Shown one piece after another: positions 9,321 to 33,996 of a DNA stretch of 64,000 bases. Each line of letters starts with the position of its first letter. Position 1 is the stretch's first letter. Position numbers and translations under genes: made by a program. The stretch is taken from contig NIVC01002250.1 of the NCBI GenBank assembly GCA_002269645.1, positions 1 through 64,000 of the forward strand, given 5' to 3'. The notes beneath the pieces are model-generated. The model was not told where the DNA came from, ran no database searches, and worked only from the letters and a program-made list of their open reading frames with translations. This DNA comes from Macrostomum lignano. Lineage: Eukaryota.

Positions 9321-10288
9321 CAACCTACAAGACATCAGTCTGCTCACCGTGCGCGTTTTCAAGACCCAGTCTGAGCGCAAAAAGAAGCACCGTGGCCAGC
9401 AGCAGCCGCAGATTCTGCAACAGCAGCAGCAGCATCGCAAGAACCGCCTAGTTGGCGAGTTGAACATCCCCACTCACGAGATTCTCAGCCCCACGGAGCG
9501 CTGGTTCGATTTGGCGCCGGCGTCATCCTCGGTGTCGTCTAGTGGCAGCGCCGCGTCCTCGGCGCCGGCGGCCATCCGAGTGAAGGCGCGCTACCTCAGC
9601 GTTGACGTCCTGCCGTTGGCCTGGTACTCCGGCCTGCACGACTGCCTGCTGCGCGACCACTGCCTTCTGGCCGCCTGCCTGGAGCCCCGCCTGCACGTCC
9701 GGGTGAAGGAGGACCTGGCCAGCTGCCTGGTGGCGCTGGCGCACCGGCGCGGCCGAGCGCACAGTCTGGTAGCCGATCTGGTGTTGCAGGAGCTCGAACC
9801 CGCGACTGGCCCGGCCGGTGCAATCGCTGGCATAGATTTCCGCGGCAACTCCCTAGCAACTAAGAGTGTTGAGCACTATCTGCGCCTGGTGGGCTCTCGC
9901 TACCTTCGCCAGGTGCTGTCGGAGCCGCTGTCGATGTTGCTACGGTCGGGCGATTGCTGCGAAGTTGACCCGCTGAAGGTGTCCGGCCCTGCCGAGCTGG
10001 CCGCGAACCAGCGCTCCCTTTGCCTGTTCGCCGAGCTGTTCTGGTCCCGGGTGGCCTCCTCGTTGGACCGCCTGCCGTCTGATATTCGCCGCCTGTTTGC
10101 CTACATTCGGCAGCGTCAGCGGCGTCAGCAGATGTGCGACACCTTGGTGAGCGCCGGCTTTTTCCTTCGGTTCGTCTGCCCGGCCATACTCGGCCCATCG
10201 CTGTTCGGCCTGTGCCAGGAGCTGCCCGGGCCCAGGGCTGCCAGGGCGCTGACTCTCATTGCCAAGACTGTGCAGAACCTGGCCAATG
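9321..10288 (+). CDS. RasGAP exon, end of C2 plus catalytic RasGAP domain
   Basis: Contains the arginine-finger motif FRGNSLATK and the signature [15 protein letters not shown]...[13 protein letters not shown]. Donor G|GTGGGT in phase 1 fits the next exon. Confidence 0.92.
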
Positions 10289-10304
10289 GTGGGTTGCCGT
10301 TTTG

Positions 10305-10630
10305 TCTGTCACTCCCAGTGTCTAATTGTTGTCTGTCACTCCAGTGTCTGTTGTCTGTCACTCCAGTGTCTTTGTTGTCTGTCACTCCAGTGTGGTAAGT
10401 GTGTCACTCCAGTGTCTGTTGTCTGTCACTCCAGTGTCTGTTGTCTGTTACTCCAGTGTCTGTTGTCTGTCACTCCAGTGTCTGTTGTCTGTCACTCCAG
10501 TGTCTGTTGTCTGTCACTCCAGTGTCTGTTGTCTGTCACTCCAGTGTGGTAAGTGTGTCACTCCAGTGTCTCCATCTGTCACGCCAACGTCTCCATCTGT
10601 CACTCCAACGTCTCCATCTGTCACTCCAGC
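10305..10630. repeat. ~22-bp minisatellite (GTCTGTTGTCTGTCACTCCAGT)
   Basis: Read directly; lies in intron 10289-10751. Confidence 0.88.
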
Positions 10631-13060: not shown

Positions 13061-13624
13061 CTCGCGCACGCAATCCTGGCATTATTCAAACCAAATTCAA
13101 GCCAGCTCGGCCTAGTCCATTATTTCTATGTTTTGTTTTTTAAAAGCGTAGGCATTTTCCTAGGATTGAAACTAATATTAATTAGAATGCTTTATTGTGT
13201 GTCTGTCGCATCACTGTTGCGCCCAGCATATGCCACTGGAGAGGCATAGAGTTTATTTATATCTCTGTCTATGCTTAGTTCAGCTGCGTGAGACTGACTG
13301 CATTATTGTATATCGCTATTTTTCATTTCCAACACGTTTATGCCATGCGGTGTGCAATTCTAATGCATCTCTCGCCCCCCCCCCCTGTCACTCAATGCAG
13401 CAAACTGCCTTATAAGACTATTTACATGTATTGCCTGTCCATCTCTCTCTCGGTTGCTTGTGATAAGCTTCTAATTTTATTAGTTTGGTTTTTTGTTTGT
13501 TTGTTGTGTCTGAAGCTGGATTCTACCTGTGCTTGTGTTTGAGCATCTTAGCTCTTATCGAATATTAGATCGTTATTTTGAAATGCAGAGATCTCATTTC
13601 CAGGGCTTGAGATCTCCCGGGGGT

Positions 13625-13882
13625 TAAGAGAAGAGAGATCCCATGAATGAGATTCTACCGAAGTAGAGAGATCTCATGGGAGAGCTTCTGCCGAAGTAGA
13701 GAGATCTCATGGGAGAGATTCTACCGAAGTAGAGAGATCTCATGGGAGAGATTCTACCGAAGTAGAGAGATCTCATGGGAGAGATTCTACCGAAGTAGAG
13801 AGATCTCATGGGAGAGATTCTGCCGAAGTAGAGAGATCTTATGGGAGAGATTCTTCCTAAGTTTTAGGGAAGATACTTATCA

Positions 13883-13917
<35 letters not shown>
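13625..13917. repeat. 33-bp minisatellite (AGAGATCTCATGGGAGAGATTCTACCGAAGTAG) followed by a short (GA)n
   Basis: About 6 copies; 11-aa repeat in the ORF track. Confidence 0.88.
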
Positions 13918-19848: not shown

Positions 19849-20040
19849 ATCGCTTCTCGGCCTTATTGGCTAAGATCAAAGTGTAGTTTCTGTTCTTTAG
19901 AGATTAATTCCTCTAACGTAGGCCATTGGTCTACTAAGTAATTAATCCGGTTTTTGATGAGTCGGCCCAGTGCTTCGTGTTCACACGACCTGGTCCACGC
20001 GTAGGCCTTGCGCTGCAGTACAGCAAGGATCTGCGCATCT
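19849..20040 (+). ncRNA. U2: U2 spliceosomal snRNA gene (full length, divergent variant)
   Basis: Begins ATCGCTTCTCGGCCTTATTGGCTAAGATCAAAGTGTAGT. Stem IIa TTAGAG/CTCTAA, stem IIb GTAGGCC/GGTCTAC, stem IIc complement AATTAAT (19940-19946), Sm-like GGTTTTTGA, stems III and IV with a CTGCAGTA loop. The 3' end is approximate. Confidence 0.93.
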
Positions 20041-20389
20041 AATAAATTTAAAATAATTAAGGTCGGACATACAAAGCCATTCATTGAATCAAGGCCAGTA
20101 AATTTGAAGCTTTGCGGAAAGTCGTATTAAAGTTTGAAACTGCACTAGGTCAGTCAGCAAGTCATTCATACAGCTAGCTAGAGAAAGTCAGTTTCTTGCT
20201 CTCGAATTGAGTCTTAGTTATATGGATGGACAATGGCAATTGACAATGTATAGCTTGCTTTTGACCGGGAGAACCTACAATGCATGCATATAAAATCAGA
20301 CACTTTAAACTGCTATTTGATTGCATTTATAGTGAGTATAGTCCGAGAGGTATCAACACTCATGCTTGTTAAACGTCTCTTGAGAATTA

Positions 20390-21461
20390 GAGGGTGAGAC
20401 AGGGGGTGACAGGGATGAGACAGTGGGTGACAGGTGTGAAACAGTGAGTGACAGGGTGAGACAGTGGGTGACAGGTGTGAGACAGTGGGTGACAGGTGTG
20501 AGACAGTGGGTGACAGGGTGAGACAGTGAGTGTCAGGGTGAGACAGTGGGTGTCAGGGTGAGACAGTGGGTGTCAGGGTGAGACAGTGGGTGAGACAGTG
20601 GGTGACAGGGTGAGACAGTGGGTGACAGGTGTGATACAGTGAATGACAGGGAGAGACAGTGAGTGACAGGGTGAGACAGTGGGTGACAGGTGTGATACAG
20701 TGAATGACAGGGTGAGACAGTGAGTGACAGGGAGAGACAGTGAGTGACAGGGTGAGACAGTGAGTGACAGGGTGAGACAGTGAGTGTCAGGGTGAGACAG
20801 TGGGTGACAGGTGTGATACAGTGAGTGACAGGGTGAGACAGTGGGTGACAGGTGTGATACAGTGGGTGACAGGGTGAGACAGTGGGTGACAGGGATGAGA
20901 CAGTGGGTGACAGGGTGAGACAGTGGGTGACAGGGATGAGACAGTGGGTGACAGGGTGAGACAGTGGGTGATAGGGTGAGACAGTGGGTGACAGGGTGAG
21001 ACAGTGGGTGACAGGGATGAGACAGTGGGTGACAGGGTGAGACAGTGGGTGACAGGGATGAGACAGTGAGTGACAGGTGTGATACAGTGGGTGACAGGGT
21101 GAGACAGTGGGTGACAGGGATGAGACAGTGGGTGACAGGGTGAGACAGTGGGTGACAGGGTGAGACAGTGGGTGATAGGGCGAGACAGTGGGTGACAGGG
21201 TGAGACAGTGGGTGACAGGGATGAGACAGTGGGTGACAGGGTGAGACAGTGGGTGACAGGGTGAGACAGGGTGAGACAGTGGGTGACAGGGTGAGACAGT
21301 GGGTGACAGGGTGAGACAGTGGGTGACAGGGTGAGACAGTGAGTGACAGGGTGAGACAGTGGGTGACAGGGTGAGACAGTGGGTGACAGGGTGAGACAGT
21401 GGGTGACAGGATGAGACAGTGGGTGACAGGGTGAGACAGTGGGTGACAGGATGAGACAGTG
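20390..21461. repeat. 20-bp minisatellite (GGGTGACAGGGTGAGACAGT), copy 1
   Basis: Read directly; ends at the retrotransposon 5' junction. Confidence 0.95.
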
Positions 21462-23734
21462 AAACGTCACTGCGGTGTACACCGGCCCTGATCAGGCGAC
21501 TGCCGACATCCCCGTCGAGAGCGGTGTCCGGCAAGGGTGCCCGCTGTCCGGAGTGCTGTTCGCCCTCTGCATGGAGCCGCTACTGCGTGCGCCAAACCAG
21601 GCTGACGGCTACAACCTCCTGGGGCACAGCAGGCAACTCAGCCTCGCCTACGCCGACGACGCTGCGCTCTTAGCCAACAGCGGCGAGGCCCTGCAGCGCA
21701 CGGTGACAGCGATCGACCGCGCCGCAGCCTGGGCCGGCCTAGAGATCAACCCCGACAAGTGTGGCCGCCTCACCATCAACGGCGGGCCCGGGGAGGACTT
21801 CCAGCTGCGCGTACAGGCAGGCGCGATCCGGGCGCTCGCAGAGGACGAATTCTACGAGTACCTGGGCGTGCCGGCCGGCGAACGCCGCTCTGCATCCGTG
21901 GCGGCGCTGCTGGAACGCGCGCTCAACGATCTGACGGCCGTGGCGAACAGCGACCTGCTACCGTGGCAGAAGCTCGACGCCTACAACACCTTCATTGCGT
22001 CGCGCCTGCCATTCCACCTCCGCCTGCGCGACGCCGACTGGACGAAGCTCGGCAACCCAAGGCGCAAACTGCAAGGGCATCAGAGAGCGGAGCTGGGCTA
22101 CGACGAGCGCGCACGTCAAATCCTCCGCCGCATCGTCTACCTTCCGACGCAGTCCTCGACAGACTACCTCTACGCCGACAGATGCCACGGCGGCCTTGGC
22201 CTGTCCCTAGCGAAGGAGGAAGCAGCCGTCCAAAAGGTCACCGAGGCCGTCAGGCGACTCTGCTGCACAGACGCCGCGCTCAGAGAGCTAGCCTGGGCCG
22301 AACTGCGCGGCCTGGTCCAACGCCGCCTACGGCTCCGCGCTGCACCTGTCAGACCTCGCGACGTCGCCGATTTCCTCAATGGCGCAGCACTCCCACCCAG
22401 CGGAGAAACGGCCAGCTGGTGGTTCCAAGTCCGCCACGCCACCCGCGAAGTGCTCCATGCGACCGGGCTGCGCTTCACCATCAGCTACGACTGGACGGCC
22501 AGCCTGGAGTGGCGCGACCCGCTGTCCGGAAACATCCAGCGATGCGACAGAGCGGCAGCAATAACCCGGAGGCTTCACCAGGCGGTCAGGGCAGCGCACA
22601 CGGCGGCCTGGCGCGGGTGCCACTCCCAAGGCCGATTCGCCACGACCGCCACGCACATCGGCAGCCACACCTGGCTGTTCAGCAGCACCGGCATGCGCGC
22701 CTGCGACTGGCGCTTCATCCACCGAGCGCGGCTCAACCTGGTGCCCACCAACGCGCTCCGGAGACTGGCCGACCCGACATCCGACCCGCGATGCCGCCGC
22801 TGCGGAGCCGGCGTCGAGACGCTCGGCCACGTGATCAACAGCTGCCCGGTGCACGCGGCCAGGTGGAGGGACCGCCACGACGGCATCGTCAACGCCGTCG
22901 CCACCGCCATCAGCGAGGCCCGCCCAAACGCGACCATCACCACCGACCAGGAGGTCCTTCCCGGCTCTGATCTGCGACCTGACATCAGCATCATGGATCC
23001 AGACAGAGGCCGCCGTCTCCTGATCGAAGTCAAGTCGCCGTTCGAGGTCAGGCCGGCCACGTTCCCACGCAAGCACCGAGCCGTATGCCAGAAGTACGCC
23101 GGCATCACGCAGCAGCTCAGCGCAGAGGCGCCAACGGCCCTGGCCACTTTCTGCATCGGCTCGCTGGGCGCCTGGTCGCCTTTCAACAACGCCATCCTGC
23201 GCGCTGCAGGCCTGCGCGAGCGCGACATCCGGCACCTCCAACGACGACTGGCGCTGCACTGCATCCACTGGAGCCGCAACACGTGGGTGGAGCACTGCAC
23301 CGGCGCACCTCAAATCCACTGATTTTGTGCCGAACTCTGCCAAACTCTGCTCATCTCAGCCCACCCTGTTACCTTTACTTTTACCTGTTTTATTTATCTT
23401 CCACTCTGCATTTTGTTTTACTTTGTTTTTCTTTAATATTTTACTTTTTACTGTCTCGAAGTTCATGCACTCTGTAAGCATTTTTCGCTGTGATTCCGCC
23501 TCTCGCGCCCATCCCCGCCGCCACCCCGTCTCCTGCGCCTTCACTTTTTCCCACTGTTTTAATTGCATTTACTTCAATGTTTTACTGTTTTACGCATCCT
23601 GCGAACCCGTTTTTAGCTACTTTCAGTAGCATCATCGGCTCTTGGCCAAATATTTCCGCTCATATCGCATCGTTTAAATACTTAAATATATTGCCCGACC
23701 GTCGGATACTCGGCCGACGGGCAGGGCCTTTCGC
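21462..23734 (+). mobile_element. 5'-truncated RLE-type non-LTR retrotransposon of the U2-targeting Utopia (NeSL-related) type
   Basis: Uninterrupted ORF with the RT C-terminal half, CCHC knuckle, RHD and PD-(D/E)xK endonuclease, then a ~410-nt T-rich 3' UTR that joins directly to TCTGTTCTT of U2, the known Utopia target site. Confidence 0.9.
21463..23322 (+). CDS. Utopia-like ORF remnant: partial reverse transcriptase, zinc knuckle and restriction-like endonuclease
   Basis: GVRQGCPLS, LAYADD, YEYLG, CRRCGAGVETLGHVINSC, WRDRHDGIV, RPDISI...LIEVKSP. No internal stops and no N-terminus. Confidence 0.9.
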   Translation, partial: NVTAVYTGPDQATADIPVESGVRQGCPLSGVLFALCMEPLLRAPNQADGYNLLGHSRQLSLAYADDAALLANSGEALQRTVTAIDRAAAWAGLEINPDKCGRLTINGGPGEDFQLRVQAGAIRALAEDEFYEYLGVPAGERRSASVAALLERALNDLTAVANSDLLPWQKLDAYNTFIASRLPFHLRLRDADWTKLGNPRRKLQGHQRAELGYDERARQILRRIVYLPTQSSTDYLYADRCHGGLGLSLAKEEAAVQKVTEAVRRLCCTDAALRELAWAELRGLVQRRLRLRAAPVRPRDVADFLNGAALPPSGETASWWFQVRHATREVLHATGLRFTISYDWTASLEWRDPLSGNIQRCDRAAAITRRLHQAVRAAHTAAWRGCHSQGRFATTATHIGSHTWLFSSTGMRACDWRFIHRARLNLVPTNALRRLADPTSDPRCRRCGAGVETLGHVINSCPVHAARWRDRHDGIVNAVATAISEARPNATITTDQEVLPGSDLRPDISIMDPDRGRRLLIEVKSPFEVRPATFPRKHRAVCQKYAGITQQLSAEAPTALATFCIGSLGAWSPFNNAILRAAGLRERDIRHLQRRLALHCIHWSRNTWVEHCTGAPQIH

Positions 23735-23886
23735 TCTGTTCTTTAGAGATTAATTCCTCTAACGTAGGCCATTGGTCTACTAAGTAATTAATCCGGTTTT
23801 TGATGAGTCGGGCCAGTGCTTCGTGTTCACACGACCTGGTCCACGCGTAGGCCTTGCGCTGCAATACAGCAAGGATCTGCGCATCT
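23735..23886 (+). pseudogene. U2 snRNA 3' fragment lacking the first ~40 nt and promoter, immediately downstream of the retrotransposon
   Basis: Colinear with 19889-20040 (offset 3846), with two substitutions within the RNA portion. Confidence 0.9.
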
Positions 23887-24235
23887 AATAAATTTAAAAT
23901 AATGAAGGTCGGACATACAAAGCCTTTCATTGAATCAAGGCCAGTAAATTTGAAGCTTTGCGGAAAGTCGTATTAAAGTTTGAAACTGCACTAGGTCAGT
24001 CAGCTAGTCATTCATACAGCTAGCTAGAGAAAGTCAGTTTCTTGCTCTCGAATTGAGTCTTAGTTATATGGATGGACAATGGCAATTGACAATGTATAGC
24101 TTGCTTTTGACCGGGAGAACCTACAATGCATGCATATAAAATCAGACACTTTAAACTGCTATTTGATTGCATTTATAGTGAGTATAGTCCGAGAGGTATC
24201 AACACTCATGCTTGTTAAACGTCTCTTGAGAATGA

Positions 24236-26292
24236 GAGGGTGAGACAGTGGGTGACAGGGTGAGACAGTGAGTGACAGGGGTGAGACAGTGAGTGACAGG
24301 GGTGAGACAGTGAGTGACAGGGTGAGACAGTGGGTGACAGGTGTGAGACAGTGGGTGACAGGTGTGAGACAGTGGGTGACAGGGTGAGACAGTGAGTGTC
24401 AGGGTGAGACAGTGGGTGTCAGGGTGAGACAGTGGGTGTCAGGGTGAGACAGTGGGTGAGACAGTGGGTGACAGGGTGAGACAGTGGGTGACAGGTGTGA
24501 TACAGTGAGTGACAGGGTGAGACAGTGAGTGACAGGGTGAGACAGTGAGTGACAGGGAGAGACAGTGAGTGACAGGGTGAGACAGTGAGTGACAGGGTGA
24601 GACAGTGAGTGACAGGGTGAGACAGTGGGTGACAGGTGTGATACAGTGAGTGACAGGGTGAGACAGTGAGTGACAGGGTGAGACAGTGAGTGACAGGGAG
24701 AGACAGTGAGTGACAGGGTGAGACAGTGAGTGACAGGGTGAGACAGTGAGTGACAGGGTGAGACAGTGGGTGACAGGGTGAGACAGTGAGTGACAGGGAG
24801 AGACAGTGAGTGACAGGGTGAGACAGTGAGTGACAGGGTGAGACAGTGGGTGACAGGTGTGATACAGTGAGTGACAGGTGTGATACAGTGAGTGACAGGG
24901 TGAGACAGTGGGTGACAGGTGTGATACAGTGAGTGACAGGGTGAGACAGTGGGTGACAGGTGTGATACAGTGAGTGACAGGGTGAGACAGTGGGTGACAG
25001 GTGTGATACAGTGGGTGACAGAGTGAGACAGTGGGTGACAGGGTGAGACAGTGGGTGACAGGGTGAGACAGTGGGTGACAGGGTGAGACAGTGAGTGACA
25101 GGGTGAGACAGTGGGTGACAGGGTGAGACAGTGGGTGACAGGTGTGATACAGTGAGTGACAGGGTGAGACAGTGGGTGACAGGGTGATACAGTGAGTGAC
25201 AGGGTGAGACAGTGGGTGACAGGGTGAGACAGTGAGTGACAGGGTGAGACAGTGGGTGACAGGGTGAGACAGTGGGTGACAGGTGTGATACAGTGAGTGA
25301 CAGGGTGAGACAGTGGGTGACAGGGTGAGACAGTGGGTGACAGGGTGAGACAGTGGGTGACAGGTGTGATACAGTGAGTGACAGGGTGAGACAGTGGGTG
25401 ACAGGGTGAGACAGTGGGTGACAGGTGTGATACAGTGAGTGACAGGGTGAGACAGTGGGTGACAGGGTGAGACAGTGGGTGACAGGGTGATACAGTGAGT
25501 GACAGGGTGAGACAGTGGGTGACAGGGTGAGACAGTGAGTGACAGGGTGAGACAGTGGGTGACAGGGTGAGACAGTGGGTGACAGGTGTGATACAGTGAG
25601 TGACAGGGTGAGACAGTGGGTGACAGGGTGAGACAGTGGGTGACAGGGTGAGACAGTGGGTGACAGGTGTGAGACAGTGGGTGACAGGGTGAGACAGTGA
25701 GTGTCAGGGTGAGACAGTGGGTGACAGGGTGAGACAGTGGGTGACAGGTGTGAGACAGTGGGTGACAGGGTGAGACAGTGGGTGACAGGTGTGATACAGT
25801 GAGTGACAGGGTGAGACAGTGGGTGACAGGTGTGATACAGTGAGTGACAGGGTGAGACAGTGGGTGACAGGTGTGATACAGTGAGTGACAGGGTGAGACA
25901 GTGGGTGACAGGTGTGATACAGTGGGTGACAGAGTGAGACAGTGGGTGACAGGGTGAGACAGTGGGTGACAGGGTGAGACAGTGGGTGACAGGGTGAGAC
26001 AGTGGGTGACAGGTGTGATACAGTGAGTGACAGGGTGAGACAGTGGGTGACAGGTGTGATACAGTGAGTGACAGGGTGAGACAGTGGGTGACAGGTGTGA
26101 TACAGTGGGTGACAGGGTGAGACAGTGGGTGACAGGGTGAGACAGTGGGTGACAGGGTGAGACAGTGGGTGACAGGGTGAGACAGTGGGTGACAGGGTGA
26201 GACAGTGGGTGACAGGTGTGATACAGTGAGTGACAGGGTGAGACAGTGGGTGACAGGTGTGATACAGTGGGTGACAGGGTGAGACAGTGGGT
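24236..26292. repeat. 20-bp minisatellite (GGGTGACAGGGTGAGACAGT), copy 2
   Basis: Same unit, and shares the diagnostic run of three TGTC-variant units plus a half unit with copy 1. Confidence 0.95.
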
Positions 26293-27051
26293 GGCTAACC
26301 ACAATGGCTCGACAGCAGTATAAAGCTTTCAATGGCATCAATCAATCAGCCTTCTCTTCCTTTCTGCATATTTTGCTACAACAAATATTCACCTCATCAG
26401 CGCTGCGGTCTCCTGGGCCCCCGCGGCCGCCGCCGACTCTCAATGCACGCAGGTCCTCGCTTAATTTGTATGGAAATTCAAATTGGGCCGTGGGACCCCG
26501 CGGGGCCACAGGTCAGCAGCCCCGGCAGCCGCTGACCCCTTGACCCCTGCGACTTCTCAAGCGGGATCTCTGGTGGGGACTCAGCATCCCGGGGTCGGTT
26601 CGTGCGTGTTTTTTCTTCCAACAGTGAAATTCAATTTTCAGGGGCGGGAGCAAAGGGAAGGAGAGTGCTTTTGAAGATTCCCCGCTTCCCTTCTCTGGCT
26701 GATCCCATGGGAGGAGTTCATTCGAGCCAGCGCTGCGGGTTGGGAAAAGCGAAAGTTGGGCTAAAAATGATTTAACAGCAACGAGAGGAGGCTGGCTCTG
26801 CATCGATACAGTAGCGATTGAGGTGGAGGAGAATTGTGTAACTACTCCAGTTCTTAGGGAGAAATATCCCCAAGAGACAAGTTTCCCGCATTAAGTGAGT
26901 GAAGGGGAAAGAATTGGAAACGAAAAATTTGCTTAGGAATTGAAAACATTCCTGCGAGAGCTTCAACTGAGAGTGGATGCCTTCGCAAATGGATTCGTCA
27001 GGGGCGCTTGGGGTGGCCGATCTAGCGATTTGATAGATAGCTCTGAGGCAT

Positions 27052-27535
<484 letters not shown>

Positions 27536-28277
27536 CCTCACCAGCAGGCAAAGCTGTGCAGTAGTTGACAATCAACTGCAGCCATTGGCATTAGTTTTGC
27601 TAGCTATTATATATTTGCACGAACAGCTTACAGTAGCTCAACAAAATTTAATTATTTATAAAATTGGGTCACGTGATGCAGCAGCAGAGCAGATTACTGA
27701 GGGCTAAAATTGTAACCAAATCGGGGGTCAAAAATTGCAACACTTGGATTAGCAAAACGCTGAGAGACAGTTAATTCAGGTTTGTGGCTAGAAAAGATCC
27801 CTGAGGCAAAAATCATGGCTGACAATGATCCTTTGGATTCCAGCATGGATTGCACAGTTGCGCAACCATTGTTTGTCTGCATGGCTAGCAAAATCTGCTC
27901 AGCCCGTGTTTGTGGTCTCAAAGTCAGTTTGGGGAAGAAATTAAGCGACATTTCAATCAAAGGTTGTGTGGATTTACAGGACAGAAGAGTAAAGGAATTC
28001 AACTGTAAAGCAGCTGCAATCAGGTGTGTAAAGGGAGCAACAGCTGACAGACAATGATTATAGCTCGTACAAGAGAGTTCGGTCCTTGAGACGCAAAAGC
28101 CTGAGGACAAGGAAATGTACAAATAAACATTAAAAACAGTTTGTTCAGTAATGAAAAGTAGAAAACATTAGTGGTGGAATTGAACACGGCACCTACGCAA
28201 GTGTTATGCTAATTACTGGTATTATTAAATAGATCGCCAATGCGTGTAACAGCGATAACAGCTCCTGCAATCCGCCG

Positions 28278-30527
28278 CTAGGGCAGAACCGGCCTGCAGA
28301 CTCTGCGCCCGTCGCCAAGGCAGTTGAAGGCGTCGGCGAATCCCGGGAGTCGCGCCAGCAGGCGGCCGACCCGGTCAGGCAGCGGCCCCGCCCGGCCCCA
28401 CCGGTGCCCCGGCACCGCCTTCTGGCAGTACAGCTGGCTGACCGACACGAAGAATTCCCGCCTGGCTGCTGGAGATGCCGGTGATGTCGGAGATGTCATT
28501 CTCAGCGCCGCGGCGGCCGCGGTAAACTCGACGAAGTCTCGACGGACGGCTGCCGTCTCGGCGTCCAGACAGTCGGCAGCTGAGCGGTTGAGCGCGGCTG
28601 GCGGCGCCTGGGCGACGGCCCGGCTGGCCAGCTCGTAGGCCAGCAGGAAGTCGAGCTGGCGCGGCCGCGGCAGCAGCGCCGGCAAGTAGAAGGCCAGCGG
28701 ATACGGGAACCGGCGCCCCTGGTCGTCGAGGGCGTCGCGGAAGAATCGCGGCGGCAAAGGCGGCGCCGGCGTCGGCAGCGGCGGAGCTGCGGAGGCGGCG
28801 TGAAAGGCGAGGCGGTGGGCGGACAGGCGGCGGTGGCGCAGGGCATCCAGCAGGCCGGGCAGGAAGGCCGCATCGGCTGGCAGGCGGAGGTCGCCGTACT
28901 GGTTCAGCAGCCGCTCCTCGCCACCGAGGCCGCCGAAGTCAGTCGGCAGTCCCAGGACGGGAACTTTGGGACGGCCTGCCAGGCGAGGGTCGCCGCCGGT
29001 CTCCGCCAGCAGCGCCGCCCTGGCCGCCTCTGTCCGGTCGGCGGCAAGCCGCAGCGGCCCGGCCCCGGGGCTGAGGTGTCTGGCAGCGAAGGTCGCTAGC
29101 AAAGCGTCGGGGAACAGGCGGTGCAGACTGCGCAGGCACCGCTCCGGCCTGTCGCCATCAGCGAACCTGTCGGGATGCTCGCCAGCCGGCGCCACCTCCG
29201 TCGGCAGAGCGTCGCGCAGCTCGTGGAAGTGCGGCCTGAGCGCCACCAGCGAGTTGACGAACGCGTAGCCAACCAGCGTGTCCGGGTCCTGCCGGGACGC
29301 CAAGTCGAAGAGACGCCGCAGCCGGTCGGGCTGCCTGGCGCAGACCCGGCTGTACTTGCCCTCCGCCCAGGCTGGCAGGATGAGGCTGCGGAAGCTGGCC
29401 CAGCCGGTGGCGCCGTTCGGGAACAAGCCGGCAAGACCGGCGGCGTCCAGCAGATGGTCCTCCGGGGCGGCCCGGCTCTCGCCGTCTAGCAGCTGATGCA
29501 GCGCCACGTGGTAGGCGGCCATCTTCTCCACAATGAGGTAGGGGACCCCGCGCTTGGCCAAGCGGAAGGCCGCCTCGACCAGGCGGACCAGGCGGTCCCG
29601 GCCGACACCCGCCAGGCCGCGGGGTGGCGCCGGCGTCAGGCACAACGGCAGCGAGTCAGCCGGAATCGCTGACCCCGGCACGGGCGATACCAGATCCACC
29701 CCGGCTGGCAAGTCGTGCACCAGGAACTGAGCGAGGACCCGCTCCGGGGAGTGCTCGAAGCCCCAGACCACCGACTCGGCGCCGAACACTGACATGGGGG
29801 TGAAGCGGGTCGGGTCGGAGAAGGCGGAGACCAGCTGGGTGGCGGTGAGGCCGGCCGAGGAGGCGCAGGCGCGCGTCAGGTTGGCCAGCGCCGCCTGCCA
29901 GGCCGGGCGCTGCCCCGGCGCCGGTGTCAGCAGCGTCTCCAGCAGCAAGTCCCTCAGGCGGAGCTGCAGCTGCCTGATGGCGCTGGTCTCTCGCTCGACG
30001 CCCCGCCCGGTCCAGCGCAGGCTGACGGCGGCGTTGAATCTGCCGCAGGCGGCGGCGTAGAGGCCCCCGTCGGGGTCGCAGACGCCAGCCGCTGTCGACG
30101 TTGGGTCGGCGAAATCGGCCGCGTCGCCGCTCGCCGACGCCTGCCGCCAGCCGTCGGACGGCGCGGCCAGCAGCATCGACGAGGACGCGGCAGGGGAGAA
30201 TCGCCGCCTGGCGCTGCCGCCGCGGCCGCAGTCGCCGGAGTTGGCGCCGAAGGCTGTCAGGGCGGTGCGGCCGTCCAAGAAGAAATAGAACAGGCAGAGT
30301 ACGGCGAACCCGGCGGCCAGGAGAGTCAGCAGGCCGGCCAGCACGCAGGTGGTGGCGCGGCAGCGGCCGCCCTGAAGTCGCCGACCGCAGCAGCCGGTGG
30401 ATTTGGTCGCAGCCTCAGCATCCGAAGCCGCAGATGACGAGGCGGCGGAGTTGGCAGCGGCGGCTCCAGACGAGGCGGCGGGGATCAGAGATTCGTCCTT
30501 GCCAGCTGTACCGTTGGACGTTGTCAT
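28278..30527 (-). CDS. Neprilysin/ECE (peptidase M13)-like type II membrane protein, probably catalytically inactive; ORF stays open upstream to 30821
   Basis: TM helix CVLAGLLTLLAAGFAVLCLFYFFL, CDPDGGLYAAACGRF (compare PCEDFYQYACGGW), LAFYLP (compare NAFYSP), C-terminal RVGRLLARLPGFADAFNC. HEXXH is replaced by YELAS. The start codon is uncertain (30527 or 30821). Confidence 0.8.
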   Translation of the reverse strand: MTTSNGTAGKDESLIPAASSGAAAANSAASSSAASDAEAATKSTGCCGRRLQGGRCRATTCVLAGLLTLLAAGFAVLCLFYFFLDGRTALTAFGANSGDCGRGGSARRRFSPAASSSMLLAAPSDGWRQASASGDAADFADPTSTAAGVCDPDGGLYAAACGRFNAAVSLRWTGRGVERETSAIRQLQLRLRDLLLETLLTPAPGQRPAWQAALANLTRACASSAGLTATQLVSAFSDPTRFTPMSVFGAESVVWGFEHSPERVLAQFLVHDLPAGVDLVSPVPGSAIPADSLPLCLTPAPPRGLAGVGRDRLVRLVEAAFRLAKRGVPYLIVEKMAAYHVALHQLLDGESRAAPEDHLLDAAGLAGLFPNGATGWASFRSLILPAWAEGKYSRVCARQPDRLRRLFDLASRQDPDTLVGYAFVNSLVALRPHFHELRDALPTEVAPAGEHPDRFADGDRPERCLRSLHRLFPDALLATFAARHLSPGAGPLRLAADRTEAARAALLAETGGDPRLAGRPKVPVLGLPTDFGGLGGEERLLNQYGDLRLPADAAFLPGLLDALRHRRLSAHRLAFHAASAAPPLPTPAPPLPPRFFRDALDDQGRRFPYPLAFYLPALLPRPRQLDFLLAYELASRAVAQAPPAALNRSAADCLDAETAAVRRDFVEFTAAAAALRMTSPTSPASPAARREFFVSVSQLYCQKAVPGHRWGRAGPLPDRVGRLLARLPGFADAFNCLGDGRRVCRPVLP

Positions 30528-30864
30528 GGTAACGGTGAAGCCAACGGACGCTTCCGAGCGTTTTCTGGCGTGTTTTTGAATCTTTTCTGCAAAAGAAAGT
30601 AGCGGGCGCCGAAAGCAGAAGACTTGCTTTGAAGTGGGAAGGGTAGCTATTGCTGCTTCTAGAGGAAGGCTTGGTTGAGTTTTTATGCAGGGGAATTCAG
30701 TGGCGGAAGGGCAGAGCTGATTGGACTGGGGAATCGCATGGGGTCGGCTGGATTGGCCGAGGTGGTCACGAGTATTAGGCCGGGGAGACCCAGAGCCAGG
30801 GTCTGGAGCGGCATGGGTCATGTTTCCTGGAAAATGTCTCTAAATTAACGCTAAATAAACAGAA

Positions 30865-31206
30865 CTCCTTGACTTCACCGAGGGTGCTAGCGGCAACTCC
30901 AGACTCTGATACTAAATCTCCTTGACTTCACCGAGGGTGCTAGCGGCAACTCCAGACTCTGATACTAGATCTCCTTGATTCCATTGAGGGTGCTTGCGGC
31001 AACTCCAGACTCTGATACTAGATCTCCTTGATTCCATTGAGGGTGCTTGCGGCAACTCCAGACTCTGATACTAGATCCCCTTGATTCCATTGAGGGTGCT
31101 TGCGGCAACTCCAGACTCTGATACTAGATCCCCTTGATTCCATTGAGGGTGCTTGCGGCAACTCCAGACTCTGATACTAGATCTCCTTGATTCCACTGAA
31201 GGTGCT
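30865..31206. repeat. 53-bp tandem repeat, about 6.5 copies, upstream of the M13-like ORF
   Basis: Units start at 30865 and 30918 (period 53) and continue. Confidence 0.92.
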
Positions 31207-31884
31207 GGTTGGTGGGCAAACCAAGTGACAGCAGGGCAACGGACACATGCAAAGCAAAAGTGTTTGTGTTTCTGCCCGCGTCTGCTGTTGGCATTGAGAT
31301 ATAGGTAACGAGGCCAGCGCTAACGGGAAGTGCGCTTCTGCCCTGGGGCTCTGCTTTTTTGCTCCCCTCCTTTTATCCCAGATTCCGGAGACCGGCGGCT
31401 TCAGAACGGGGGTTCGTTCAGAATTATTGACAGCAATGAATTAAAAGACAGGCAGGCATCCTGATAAAACAGCTTAACAAGAAGTTTTTTGTCATAGTTC
31501 ACCCCGTCATCTTTTCTTAATAAATCTCCCCTGTTTGTTGATCCTCATGCTCATGATCACAAAAAAATGAAATTGCGACAGTAATCTGGGGATAAATAGA
31601 GAAGCAGGGGATATAGCACGAGGAAAATGGAGAAATGATATTGAAGCAAGCATAGCTTCCTTCTCACTATAAATCCTAATGTTCCCAATTCCTTTTTTAT
31701 CTTTATCCCAAAAGATCCCCCTCCTACAGACAGACGGTTAGGACTCGGCAATGCCCCAATCCCAGAAAATACAAGAACGTGTCAGCGCATTTCTCGTCTT
31801 TATTTTGTTTGTATCCTCAAATGACCCCAGTCTCCTAGATGTCTGCTTCAGGCATTAAAGTTTCTCGGTCACCAGCAACACAGA

Positions 31885-31917: not shown

Positions 31918-32223
31918 GGCGGCTGTGTTCGACTCGACTCCCCACCCAACCCGCCTTGATTGCCGATGCGTGATTTGCCGCTGTTCCGATTGTCTGTGCG
32001 ATTACGCAACTCCCGATTGCAGACAGACCGCGGCACAAACACTGCACGGAGATACAGAGAATTACAAGCTGCATACATCTGCACAAAATAATAAAAAGAT
32101 TTACGGCACTGTCAAATCTCCTTTATCTTCTGCGTTTCCTGAAGGATTTTCACTTCAACTACGAGTACCAGGAGAGGAAGTGTACGAATATTGTGCGGGC
32201 TTTGACCAAGGGTTGACAAGATA

Positions 32224-32430
32224 CTCATTTTAGCGCCGCAGGCACTCATTTTAGCGCCGCAGGCACTCATTTTAGCGCCGCAGGCACTCATTTTAGCGCC
32301 ACAGGCACTCGTTTTGGCGCCGCAGGCACTCGTTTTGGCGCCGCAGGCACTCGTTTTGGCGCCGCAGGCACTCATTTTAGCGCCGCAGGCACTTATTTTG
32401 GCGCCAAAGGCGCTATATTTTGGCGCCCTG
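32224..32430. repeat. 21-bp repeat (TTTTAGCGCCGCAGGCACTCA), possibly a MITE/transposon subterminal repeat
   Basis: About 8-9 copies. The transposon link is inference only; no termini were identified. Confidence 0.75.
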
Positions 32431-33567
32431 AAGCAAAATTATTGATTTCAACAACGGGTCACAAGGTGGGATGGGTGGACAAAGCATTGGCATGCCCCCT
32501 CATAGCTTTGGGGGGACATTGGGTTGCCGACACCCCTGGATCGTACTGTTGGTTGTCACGCTGGGCGACTCGAGTCTAGCTGGATGCTGGGATGGGAGCA
32601 GCTGCGTCATCAAGTTGTCAAGGGAAAGAGATGATAGGCATCTCTGAATAGCGGAGTTGAAAATTTCACAAATTGCTTTTTTTCTGTCCAACTTATGCGA
32701 CATAAGAGGCACTTCAGTCATCCCCCTCCCATCTCCTCTCCCTTCTCTCCCGTCTCCCTTCTCTCCCATCTCCCTTCTCTCCCGTCTCCCTTCTCTCCCA
32801 TCTCCCTTCTCTCCCGTCTCCCTTCTCTCCCGTCTCCCTTCTCTCCCGTCTCCCTTCTCTTCCGTCTCCCTTCTCTCCCATCTCCCTTCTCTCCCATCTC
32901 CCCTCTCTTCCTTTCTCCCTCGTCCTTTGACCCTCACCCATTCCCTCCTCACTCTCTCCCGACCCCACTCTCACTCTCATGTCCGCTCTCTCCGCCCCAT
33001 CCAGTGCTGCAGTAGGCTTGCTTCCATGTCTGCTCTGGCAAGCACTTCTCTCCCTCAGCAGAGTGACACAATTTCATCGATTGCAGAGTGAGCTGTGACA
33101 GGCAGAAGCAGCAGCAGCAGCAGGAGGCCTCAGGTGAAAAAATAATATAAAATAATTGCCACTTGACTGACAGGGAGATCACTGCCCGGGCTGAGATGGT
33201 TGAAAAAAGTGCCAGGTGAATAGAGAAACGAGCTGAGCCCTTGGCGCAGGTGTGCTCAGAACAATATGTGCATATTTTAGAAAAAAACTAACTGATAACT
33301 TCTGGTGCGATGAAAAAATTGTTGTCGAATCAAAACCTTCTTGACGTTTCGTCTGAGTGGCTCACAGTGGGATCTCGACGGGGGGGTGGCAGAGAATGGG
33401 ATTAATTATTCATCTAGACTGAGCAGGGTGGATCGCTTGAGCCTTTTAACAGACAGGTGCTGCCTGCTGTGCGACCCGGAGGAACAGCACACAGGGGATC
33501 TGGATCTGAAGCTTAAAAACTTCTTCCTGAAAGTCTGTCGCAATCATAATCATTATTATGCGTCCTG

Positions 33568-33996
33568 AGATGACGCCAAGACATTGAGGGTCTGGCGCCA
33601 AGACATTGAGGGTCTGGCGCAAAGAAATTGAGAGTCTGGCGCCAAGGCATTGAGGGTCTGGCGCCACGACATTGAGGGTCTGGCGCCATAGCATTGAGGG
33701 TCTGGCGCCAAGGCATTGAGGGTCTGGCGCCAAGAAATTGAGAGTCTGGCGCCAAGACATTGAGGGTCTGGCGCCAAGGCATTGAGAGTCTGGCGCCAAG
33801 ACATTGAGGGTCTGGCGCCAAGACATTGAGGGTCTGGCTTAAAGACATTGAGGGTCTGACGCCAAGACATTGAGGGTCTGGCGCCAAGGCATTGAGGGTC
33901 TGGCGCCAAGACATTAAGGGTCTGGCGCCAAGACATTGAGGGTCTGGCTTAAAGACATTGGGGGTCTGACGCCAAGGCATTGAGGGTCTGGCGCCC
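33568..33996. repeat. 22-bp minisatellite (GACATTGAGGGTCTGGCGCCAA)
   Basis: Read directly. Confidence 0.92.

What the first reader, a model, noticed from the sequence alone, without database searches (positions are those of the whole stretch)
19881..19960. Divergent U2 snRNA with altered branch-point recognition sequence (GUAGUU) and Sm site, yet compensated stems
Seen: GTGTAGTTTCTG where canonical U2 has GTGTAGTATCTG (T at 19888), and Sm-like GGTTTTTGA rather than A(U)5G. Stems IIa and IIb and the IIc pairing (loop ATTAATT with AATTAAT at 19940-19946) are all rewritten but still pair. Established: GUAGUA is near-invariant and pairs with the intron branch site. Inference: this is a selected, functional variant or lineage-specific U2. 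The changed base is the one immediately 5' of the retroelement insertion site, so it could also reflect escape from endonuclease targeting.
Basis: partly seen in the sequence, partly recalled or inferred. Interest (0 to 1): 0.72.

Follow-up and report, generated by a model that had tools for sequence, protein, structure and literature searches.

The report
Flatworm U2 snRNA gene reading GUAGUU
This is a real, well-folded U2 spliceosomal RNA gene, very probably from the flatworm Macrostomum lignano, with a rare one-base change in its branch-site reader. It lies next to a copy broken by a U2-targeting retrotransposon, and nothing here shows that the change is adaptive or a defence against that element.

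Summary
Window 19849-20043 (+) is a full-length U2 snRNA gene (Rfam RF00004, 140.6 bits). It reads GUAGUU, with T at 19888, where U2 normally reads GUAGUA. It also has an extra A upstream, the Sm-like site GGUUUUUGA, and fully paired but rewritten stems IIa, IIb and IIc.

The rewritten stems and the Sm site are identical in a second, truncated U2 copy at 23735-23889, so they are traits of the lineage. That copy starts exactly at the canonical Utopia insertion site and follows a 5'-truncated Utopia-type retrotransposon (about 21462-23734). A roughly 1.57 kb direct duplication flanks the element, and the intact gene sits at its left edge.

GUAGUU is rare but not unique. I found it in full-length U2 genes of at least five other sequence types, several inside snRNA, 5S or rDNA clusters. 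In an unbiased scan it made up 1 of 24 U2 types. It is therefore compatible with function.

The changed base pairs with intron position -5, outside the metazoan branch-site core. I could not test whether GUAGUU is this genome's main U2, because no other Macrostomum U2 was reachable. The idea of escape from the endonuclease has no support; this gene or its twin was probably itself a target.

The finding is of modest interest.

The parts
19849..20043 (+). Full-length U2 snRNA gene
   Evidence: cmscan RF00004: 140.6 bits, E = 1.1e-28, model 1-192. The thermodynamic fold recovers stems I, IIb, III and IV, z = -2.5.
19883..19888 (+). Branch-point recognition sequence reading GUAGUU (T at 19888 instead of A; human U2 position 38)
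   Evidence: Sequence and alignment to the U2 consensus.
19879..19880 (+). Run AAA (19878-19880) where the consensus has AA: one extra A between helix Ia and the branch-point recognition sequence
   Evidence: Insert column in the cmscan alignment. The same extra A occurs in 6 of 23 canonical-GUAGUA U2 types.
19897..19916 (+). Stem-loop IIa (UUAGAG / loop AUUAAUUC / CUCUAA). The loop segment ATTAATT at 19903-19909 pairs with 19940-19946 (stem IIc).
   Evidence: cmscan structure line with no non-standard pairs; direct reverse-complement check on the sequence.
19918..19934 (+). Stem-loop IIb (GUAGGCC AUU GGUCUAC)
19949..19957 (+). Sm-like site GGUUUUUGA (G where the consensus has A)
   Evidence: Sequence. 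It is identical in the disrupted copy at 23795-23803.
19889..21461 (+). Left copy of the duplicated block: U2 nt 41-195, 350 bp of 3' flank, and the first ~1.07 kb of a 20-21 bp minisatellite
   Evidence: the repeat finder family D10, 98%. 6 substitutions in 506 nt of the unique part. The minisatellite is collinear with the first 1.1 kb of the right copy.
21462..23734 (+). 5'-truncated Utopia-type non-LTR retrotransposon: the C-terminal part of the reverse transcriptase from motif B, YADD, a CCHC finger, a restriction-like endonuclease, and a ~410 nt 3' UTR
   Evidence: Open frame 21463-23322. Pfam RVT_1, E = 4.7e-15. R2 proteins are the best PDB hits. The 3' end abuts U2 at TCTG.
23735..23889 (+). 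U2 3' fragment lacking the first 40 nt (a disrupted copy), starting at the canonical Utopia/Keno site
   Evidence: The site is described in PMC4640811.
23735..25355 (+). Right copy of the duplicated block. Its minisatellite continues to about 26295, followed by unique sequence with no U2 promoter-like repeat.

Best explanation
The feature is a genuine U2 snRNA gene of Macrostomum lignano or a very close relative. It probably works as an ordinary U2.

Its rewritten but paired stems IIa, IIb and IIc and its G-for-A Sm site are lineage-typical. The A-to-U change that makes GUAGUU is a rare, recurrently tolerated substitution at the outermost position of the branch-point recognition sequence.

From the established U2/branch-site pairing, that base (human A38) faces intron position -5 from the branch adenosine. 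This is the first U of yeast UACUAAC and lies outside the metazoan yUnAy core, so its loss costs little in an animal with degenerate branch sites (inference).

In the free snRNP, A38 normally closes the branchpoint-interacting stem-loop by pairing with U32. Here the extra A and the new U allow a shifted register (A-U39, G.U38) of equal predicted stability (inference from energy evaluation only).

The gene is the intact copy left at the left edge of a Utopia retrotransposon insertion at the canonical site. The insertion is flanked by a ~1.57 kb direct duplication that begins exactly at the nick site. This is most simply read as target-primed reverse transcription with the second-strand break or repair far downstream in the minisatellite, which regenerated an intact U2 (inferred, not shown).
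For: - U2 identity and intact structure: (140.6 bits, within the 120-173 bit range of the other full-length U2 genes).
- Lineage features are shared with the disrupted copy.
- The intact copy keeps the canonical loop IV UGCAGUAC, while the dead copy has UGCAAUAC.
- GUAGUU occurs in other full-length U2 genes. The L001/L004/L005/L010/L015/L020 group (135-151 bits for the five full-length copies; L010 is cut by its contig end) sits beside U1, U4, U5, 5S and 18S rRNA. L013 (120 bits) is in a U2-U1-U5 cluster. L064 (148 bits) is in a 5S-U6-U2 cluster. L018 scores 87 bits.
- Close relatives of the first group (L052, L084, L095) read GUAGUA, so the change is derived and recurrent.
- Pairs of the branchpoint-interacting stem-loop come from PMC13019295. 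Energies: canonical +1.2, A38U alone +2.2, extra A alone +1.5 to +3.0, both +1.0 kcal/mol.
- Utopia identity: reverse transcriptase, CCHC finger and restriction-like endonuclease motifs. The 3' junction is at TCTG, as in PMC4640811. Six of eight related elements also abut U2 at TCTG.
- Duplication. There is no other U2 unit, promoter repeat or upstream minisatellite.
- Organism: 60/60 aa identity to a M. lignano UniRef protein.
Against: - Only one U2 5' half is available, so the T could be private to this copy.
- No expression data or reads were available.
- The intact copy carries a C.U mismatch in stem III that the dead copy lacks.
- The compensation in the stem-loop is small (about 1 kcal/mol), and that stem-loop is not thermodynamically favoured anyway.
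- The extra A is not significantly associated with U38 across U2 types (3/6 against 6/23; Fisher p = 0.26).
- The long-duplication model cannot be separated from a two-unit tandem array that lost its spacer on insertion.
- The species assignment rests on one 60-aa exact match.
Confidence: 0.55

Rival explanations
1. Minor or decaying paralog. The T at 19888 is a private, mildly deleterious or neutral mutation in a copy that is weakly expressed or silent. The animal's working U2 genes elsewhere are canonical GUAGUA.
For: - There is a single 5' half in the window.
- Stem III has one more mismatch than in the dead neighbour.
- The locus is repeat-ridden and has been invaded by a retroelement.
- In Utopia-bearing genomes U2 genes are few and many are damaged (PMC4640811).
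- GUAGUU accounts for only 1 of 24 U2 sequence types in the unbiased scan.
Against: - All other functional elements are intact, including the 5' end, stem I, the U6-pairing bases and canonical loop IV.
- GUAGUU is evidently fixed in other lineages.
- The bit score is in the range of presumably functional genes.
Confidence: 0.3
2. Host-element conflict. The base next to the Utopia (and Keno) nick site changed because it lowers recognition or cleavage by the element's endonuclease. The recurrence of A38U in several lineages reflects repeated escape.
For: - The changed base is exactly the one 5' of the junction.
- A38U recurs in at least four or five lineages.
- One of these looks stramenopile-like, a group in which Utopia is known. 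That assignment is an inference.
Against: - The T-bearing 5' half lies directly at the boundary of the duplication flanking a Utopia copy, and the two repeats differ by only about 1.2%. The T most likely predates the insertion, in which case the site was cut despite it.
- No Utopia was seen near the other GUAGUU genes, and no comparison of insertion rates was possible.
- Position 38 is also the branch-point recognition base expected to be least constrained, which explains the recurrence without any element.
- From my own knowledge, not tested here: R2-type proteins read target DNA mainly through N-terminal domains over tens of base pairs.
Confidence: 0.07
3. Assembly or base-call artefact. The true base at 19888 is A, and the extra A's are homopolymer length errors.
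For: - The extra A's lie in short homopolymer runs.
- The locus is duplicated and rich in minisatellites, which complicates polishing.
Against: - A-to-T is a substitution, not the usual long-read indel error.
- The same two features occur together in independent assemblies from other organisms (L013, L064).
- The rest of the gene shows no sign of sequencing noise.
Confidence: 0.05

Closest known systems
U2 spliceosomal snRNA (Rfam RF00004)
   Same: It matches the model at full length. It has the 5' end and stem I, the U6-pairing GAUC, stems IIa, IIb and IIc, an Sm-type U-run, and stem-loops III and IV with the UGCAGUAC loop.
   Different: The branch-point recognition sequence reads GUAGUU instead of GUAGUA. 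There is one extra A before it, the stem I loop has 5 nt, and the Sm site starts with G instead of A.
Utopia, the U2-gene-specific non-LTR retrotransposons with a restriction-like endonuclease (Kojima and Jurka 2015, PMC4640811)
   Same: - It has a reverse transcriptase followed by a CCHC finger and a PD-(D/E)xK-type endonuclease.
- Its 3' end is joined precisely to U2 at the U of UCUG (human nt 39).
- The disrupted copy lacks the U2 5' end, and an intact U2 lies upstream instead of a 5' fragment, as described for Phytophthora.
   Different: - It is only up to 37% identical to the nearest proteins found.
- It is 5'-truncated, so the N-terminal zinc fingers cannot be seen.
- The host is a flatworm, a phylum not in the host lists of the two papers read.
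- It is flanked by a clean ~1.57 kb direct duplication.
Keno, U2-targeting non-LTR retrotransposons with an apurinic-type endonuclease
   Same: It uses the same insertion site in U2 (PMC4640811).
   Different: The element here carries a C-terminal restriction-like endonuclease, which APE-type elements lack.
GUAGUU U2 genes of uncultured eukaryotes (loci L001/L004/L005/L010/L015/L020, L013, L018, L064)
   Same: They have the same A-to-U change at the last branch-point recognition base in otherwise intact U2 genes. L013 and L064 also share the extra A.
   Different: Their stems are unrelated, so they are different lineages. They sit in snRNA, 5S or rDNA clusters with no retroelement nearby.

Membership tests
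U2 snRNA (RF00004) | Covariance-model score above the curated gathering score over the full model | tested here: met
   140.6 bits against 46, model positions 1-192
U2 snRNA (RF00004) | Branch-point recognition sequence GUAGUA | tested here: not met
   It reads GUAGUU at 19883-19888. Five of six bases are kept, including those facing the yUnAy core.
U2 snRNA (RF00004) | Stems I, IIa, IIb, III and IV, and the IIa-loop/downstream (IIc) complementarity | tested here: met
   In the cmscan structure line only stem III has two non-standard pairs. The IIc arms are exact reverse complements.
U2 snRNA (RF00004) | Sm site of the form R-A-U(4-6)-G-R | tested here: inconclusive
   The site is GGUUUUUGA, with G in place of A. 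It is identical in the second copy, so it is lineage-typical. Binding was not testable.
U2 snRNA (RF00004) | Expressed, capped and assembled into an snRNP; the main U2 of the genome | not testable with these tools
   No reads, RNA data or other Macrostomum U2 loci could be reached.
Utopia retrotransposons | Reverse transcriptase followed by a CCHC finger and a restriction-like (PD-(D/E)xK) endonuclease | tested here: met
   Pfam RVT_1. YADD, CRRC...H...C, RHD, RPD, EVK and PFE motifs align with relatives. R2 proteins are the best PDB hits.
Utopia retrotransposons | 3' end joined to U2 at human nt 38|39 (before UCUG) | tested here: met
   The junction is at 23734|23735. Six of eight related elements show the same junction.
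Utopia retrotransposons | N-terminal zinc fingers and no Myb domain | not testable with these tools
   The copy is 5'-truncated by about 450 aa.
Utopia retrotransposons | Placement inside the Utopia clade in a reverse transcriptase phylogeny with named reference families | not tested
   No Repbase reference sequences were available. Only unnamed relatives and one bee protein were compared.
Keno (APE-type U2-specific elements) | Apurinic/apyrimidinic-type endonuclease and no restriction-like endonuclease | tested here: not met
   A C-terminal restriction-like endonuclease is present.

The most novel reading that the evidence does not exclude
GUAGUU, together with the extra A, is the principal U2 of Macrostomum. 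Its repeated appearance in unrelated eukaryotes at exactly the base beside the Utopia/Keno nick reflects a conflict between U2 genes and their site-specific retrotransposons.

In parallel, Utopia integrates with a kilobase-scale target duplication that regenerates an intact U2. This would explain why disrupted 3' fragments outnumber intact genes and why 5' fragments are never found.
Probability: 0.1. Interest if true: 0.7.

Novelty: new member of a known kind. Interest (0 to 1): 0.33.

Why it matters
GUAGUA is treated as invariant. A set of natural U2 genes reading GUAGUU, one in a laboratory flatworm with transgenesis and others fixed in snRNA/rDNA clusters, would give natural test cases. They would show how much the outermost branch-helix pair and the closing pair of the branchpoint-interacting stem-loop matter when branch sites are degenerate.

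The locus is also a clean example of a Utopia insertion flanked by a long duplication that leaves the target gene intact. This bears on how a retrotransposon can persist in a low-copy essential gene. If the base is only a private mutation of one copy, the finding is ordinary.

Tried and rejected
- Other Macrostomum U2 or Utopia copies. The protein search with the element's reading frame gave nothing above 37% identity, so this genome is not in the searchable protein and contig collections. A genome-wide census was impossible.
- Viral-contig scans for canonical and variant U2 strings found no U2 at all and were uninformative.
- A literature search for GUAGUU together with U2 snRNA returned one unrelated paper. 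A search for Macrostomum plus snRNA returned nothing useful.
- Compensation between the extra A and U38 in the branchpoint-interacting stem-loop. The energies fit, but the extra A is common with canonical GUAGUA (6 of 23 types) and the association is not significant (p = 0.26). I keep it only as a weak inference.
- The idea that Utopia 3' ends mimic the U2 sequence upstream of the nick. This is clear only in L025; the other 3' ends are merely A-rich. I dropped it as a general claim.
- A repair scar at the nick as the source of the T. Under the duplication model the top strand was never broken at this position, so templated repair would restore the original base. I rejected this as unlikely.
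- A read-through retrocopy as the origin of the duplication. The observed order (5' half, block, element, block) does not fit.
- A long-duplication pattern in the loci of eight related elements. It was not seen; they show tandem element arrays or microsatellite targets instead.

Full report
**What is in the sequence.** GTGTAGTTTCTG occupies 19881-19892, and the hexamer that reads the intron branch site is 19883-19888, GTAGTT, with T at 19888. cmscan against Rfam finds a complete U2 snRNA at 19849-20043 on the + strand (140.6 bits, gathering score 46, E = 1.1e-28, model 1-192).

Against the consensus, stem IIa is UUAGAG/CUCUAA instead of uauCAG/CUGaua, and stem IIb is GUAGGCC/GGUCUAC. Both are fully paired. 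The loop segment ATTAATT (19903-19909) is the exact reverse complement of AATTAAT (19940-19946), so the alternative IIc pairing is kept through changes on both sides. The Sm-like site is GGUUUUUGA (19949-19957).

- One extra A in GAUCAAaGUG.
- A 5-nt stem I loop.
- Two non-standard pairs in stem III.

A plain thermodynamic fold recovers stems I, IIb, III and IV (z = -2.5).

**Organism.** An open frame at 9349-10398 encodes part of a RasGAP domain. It matches a UniRef protein of Macrostomum lignano at 60 of 60 residues. This species is a free-living flatworm (Platyhelminthes, Macrostomorpha). The assignment rests on this single exact match, but no other hit came close.

**Surroundings.** The window has one U2 5' half but two U2 3' parts. 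The string TCTGTTCTTTAGAG... occurs at 19889 and at 23735, and cmscan reports the second as U2 at 81.7 bits with its 5' part unmatched. The second copy therefore lacks its first 40 nt.

Immediately upstream of it lies a GC-rich stretch, about 21462-23734. Its frame 21463-23322 is open and encodes the following:
- The C-terminal part of a reverse transcriptase, from the QGCPLS motif and YADD onward.
- A CCHC finger (CRRC...H...C).
- Restriction-like endonuclease motifs (RHD, RPD, EVK, PFE, KY).

The best matches among solved structures are R2 retrotransposon proteins. Alignment with relatives shows that about 450 N-terminal residues are missing, so the copy is 5'-truncated.

The junction lies before the U of UCUG, which is human U2 nt 38|39. 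This is the site described for Utopia, the U2-specific non-LTR retrotransposons with a restriction-like endonuclease, and for the unrelated Keno elements (PMC4640811). Of eight related elements whose contigs I fetched, six are followed by U2 starting at the same UCUG. The other two sit in simple repeats. The element meets the testable defining features of Utopia. Flatworms are not among the hosts listed in the two papers I read.

**The duplication.** Homology between the two U2 copies begins exactly at 19889/23735. It runs through the rest of U2, 350 bp of 3' flank, and into a 20-21 bp minisatellite. The unique part differs at 6 of 506 positions. The left minisatellite (20391-21461) is collinear with the first 1.1 kb of the right one (24257-25355).

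The truncated element starts where the left minisatellite stops. The right minisatellite continues to about 26295 and is followed by unrelated sequence. No U2 promoter-like repeat follows the right minisatellite, and no such minisatellite lies upstream of the intact gene. The order is therefore: U2 nt 1-40, block, truncated Utopia, the same block again.

The simplest reading is one U2 gene hit by target-primed reverse transcription at the canonical nick. The second-strand break or repair would have occurred about 1.57 kb downstream, producing a long target duplication that leaves an intact U2. The alternative is a two-unit tandem array in which the insertion deleted the spacer, the promoter and the first 40 nt of the second unit. 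I cannot separate the two and lean about 60:40 to the first. Kojima and Jurka saw the same picture in Phytophthora, with intact U2 genes rather than 5' fragments upstream of Utopia, and left both options open.

**Lineage traits and private changes.** The disrupted copy has the same stems IIa, IIb and IIc and the same Sm site, base for base. These traits belong to the lineage. They are the ordinary covariation by which these helices were originally recognised.

The two copies differ at two U2 positions. At 19966 the intact copy has C, giving a C.U mismatch in stem III, where the dead copy has G, giving a G.U pair. At 20018 the intact copy has G, giving the canonical loop IV UGCAGUAC, where the dead copy has A. 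This fits loosely with constraint on the intact copy but has no statistical weight. Position 19888 cannot be compared, because the dead copy lacks it.

**How unusual GUAGUU is.** A scan of JGI metagenome contigs for AAGTGTAGTTTCTGTTCTT gave 22 loci, of which eight hold true U2 genes.
- Six (L001, L004, L005, L010, L015, L020) come from different samples and form one group. In it U2 lies beside U1, U4, U5, 5S and the 18S rRNA gene, and all six read GUAGUU.
- L013 is a U2-U1-U5 cluster.
- L018 is a weaker U2.

A scan of the bacterial and archaeal genome collection with either base allowed picked up eukaryotic contamination. In U2 context there were 100 copies with A and one with T. The T copy, L064, is a full-length U2 (148 bits) in a 5S-U6-U2 cluster.

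Clustering the variable part gives 29 U2 types: 6 with U, including the window, and 23 with A. In the unbiased scan the ratio is 1 of 24. Close relatives of the first group (L052, L084, L095, which share the same stem IIa loop) read GUAGUA, so the change is derived there.

GUAGUU is therefore rare, recurrent, and apparently fixed in at least one lineage, which makes it compatible with function. I found no paper that describes it.

**Why it may be tolerated.** In the established U2/branch-site duplex, the last A of GUAGUA faces the first U of yeast UACUAAC, five positions upstream of the branch adenosine. The human consensus yUnAy does not include that position (title of PMC2367711, listed). 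The mapping is my derivation from textbook pairing.

In the 17S snRNP the same A pairs with U32 to close the branchpoint-interacting stem-loop. Its pairs are G25-C45, A26-U44, U27.U43, C28-G42, A29-U41, A30xC40, G31.U39 and U32-A38 (read from PMC13019295). Evaluating this hairpin gives the following energies:

| Variant | Energy (kcal/mol) |
|---|---|
| Canonical sequence | +1.2 |
| A38U alone | +2.2 |
| Extra A alone | +1.5 to +3.0 |
| Window sequence (both changes) | +1.0 |

In the window sequence the extra A pairs with U39 and G31 pairs with the new U. The two changes could therefore offset each other. However, the effect is small and the hairpin depends on proteins. The extra A also occurs with canonical GUAGUA in 6 of 23 types, and the association with U38 is not significant (p = 0.26).

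**The escape idea.** The changed base is indeed the one next to the nick. However, the T-bearing 5' half sits at the boundary of the duplication that flanks a Utopia copy, and the two repeats differ by only about 1.2%. Under neutral change, the chance that this particular base mutated after the insertion is well below 1% (my estimate). On this reading the element cut beside the T.

No retroelement lies near the other GUAGUU genes. Position 38 is also the branch-point recognition base one would expect to be freest. Escape is not excluded, but nothing here supports it.

**Verdict.** This is a real U2 gene with a rare natural variant of the branch-site reader, next to a textbook Utopia insertion in a new host phylum. 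Whether the variant is the animal's main U2 is the open question, and a genome-wide search plus RNA reads would answer it directly. Interest is modest. The adaptive story is unproven, and the compensated stems are ordinary.

Noticed in passing
window 19889-21461 and 23735-25355, around the element at 21462-23734: A 5'-truncated Utopia copy is flanked by a ~1.57 kb direct duplication that starts exactly at the nick site and ends at the element's 5' end, leaving an intact U2 upstream. This may be a kilobase-scale target-site duplication. It would explain why Utopia-bearing genomes show intact genes rather than 5' fragments upstream of insertions.
   Followed up: partly
window 21462-23734: This is a Utopia-type element in a flatworm. 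Platyhelminthes are not among the Utopia hosts listed in PMC4640811 or PMC13188248. The nearest proteins found are only up to 37% identical.
   Followed up: partly
L025 3740-3765: The 3' end of a related element reads AAGATTAAAGCATAGTT just before TCTGTTC. This looks like U2 nt 23-38 with the same extra A and final T as the window, plus three transitions. It is either a captured or mimicked piece of U2, or an insertion further upstream in a decayed U2. The other elements do not show it clearly.
   Followed up: partly
L001, L004, L005, L010, L015, L020 (metagenome contigs): An uncultured marine eukaryote group carries U2 (GUAGUU), U1, U4, U5 and 5S genes clustered next to the 18S rRNA gene. Its stem IIa loop GUGUGACAAC resembles the Phytophthora U2 fragment quoted by Kojima and Jurka, so the group may be stramenopile. 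Relatives L052, L084 and L095 read GUAGUA.
   Followed up: partly
L031-L095 (bacterial and archaeal genome collection): Dozens of MAG contigs labelled as bacteria carry eukaryotic U2 genes, some in long tandem arrays (for example the 'Hormoscilla' contig with a 1378-bp repeat). This is eukaryotic contamination of the bins.
   Followed up: no
L076 and L023: L076 holds the intact U2 of the organism whose Utopia (P0001, the closest relative of the window's element) disrupts the identical U2 in L023. That U2 has two extra A's before a canonical GUAGUA.
   Followed up: no
L029 9770-12258; L030 9219-18629: Two relatives of the element are flanked by short-period simple repeats rather than U2. This suggests a switch of target to microsatellites within this group.
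   Followed up: no
window 20391-21461 and 24257-26295: A G-rich minisatellite with a unit of about 20-21 bp (GTGAGACAGTGGGTGACAGG and variants) lies 350 bp downstream of U2. The element's 5' junction lies inside it.
   Followed up: partly
window 27040-27536: A long (TCTG)n microsatellite of about 500 bp.
   Followed up: no
window 28278-30821 (-): An 847-aa ATG-started open frame lies in very GC-rich sequence (up to 72%). It has only a weak, sub-threshold Pfam hit (Peptidase_M13_N). It was not identified and could be a gene or another mobile element.
   Followed up: no
window 13596-13895, 30808-31231, 32202-32456, 32689-32943, 33505-33995: Several further tandem repeat arrays (units of 33, 53, 21, 16 and 22 bp). 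The window is very repeat-rich overall, with strong local strand-composition skews.
   Followed up: no
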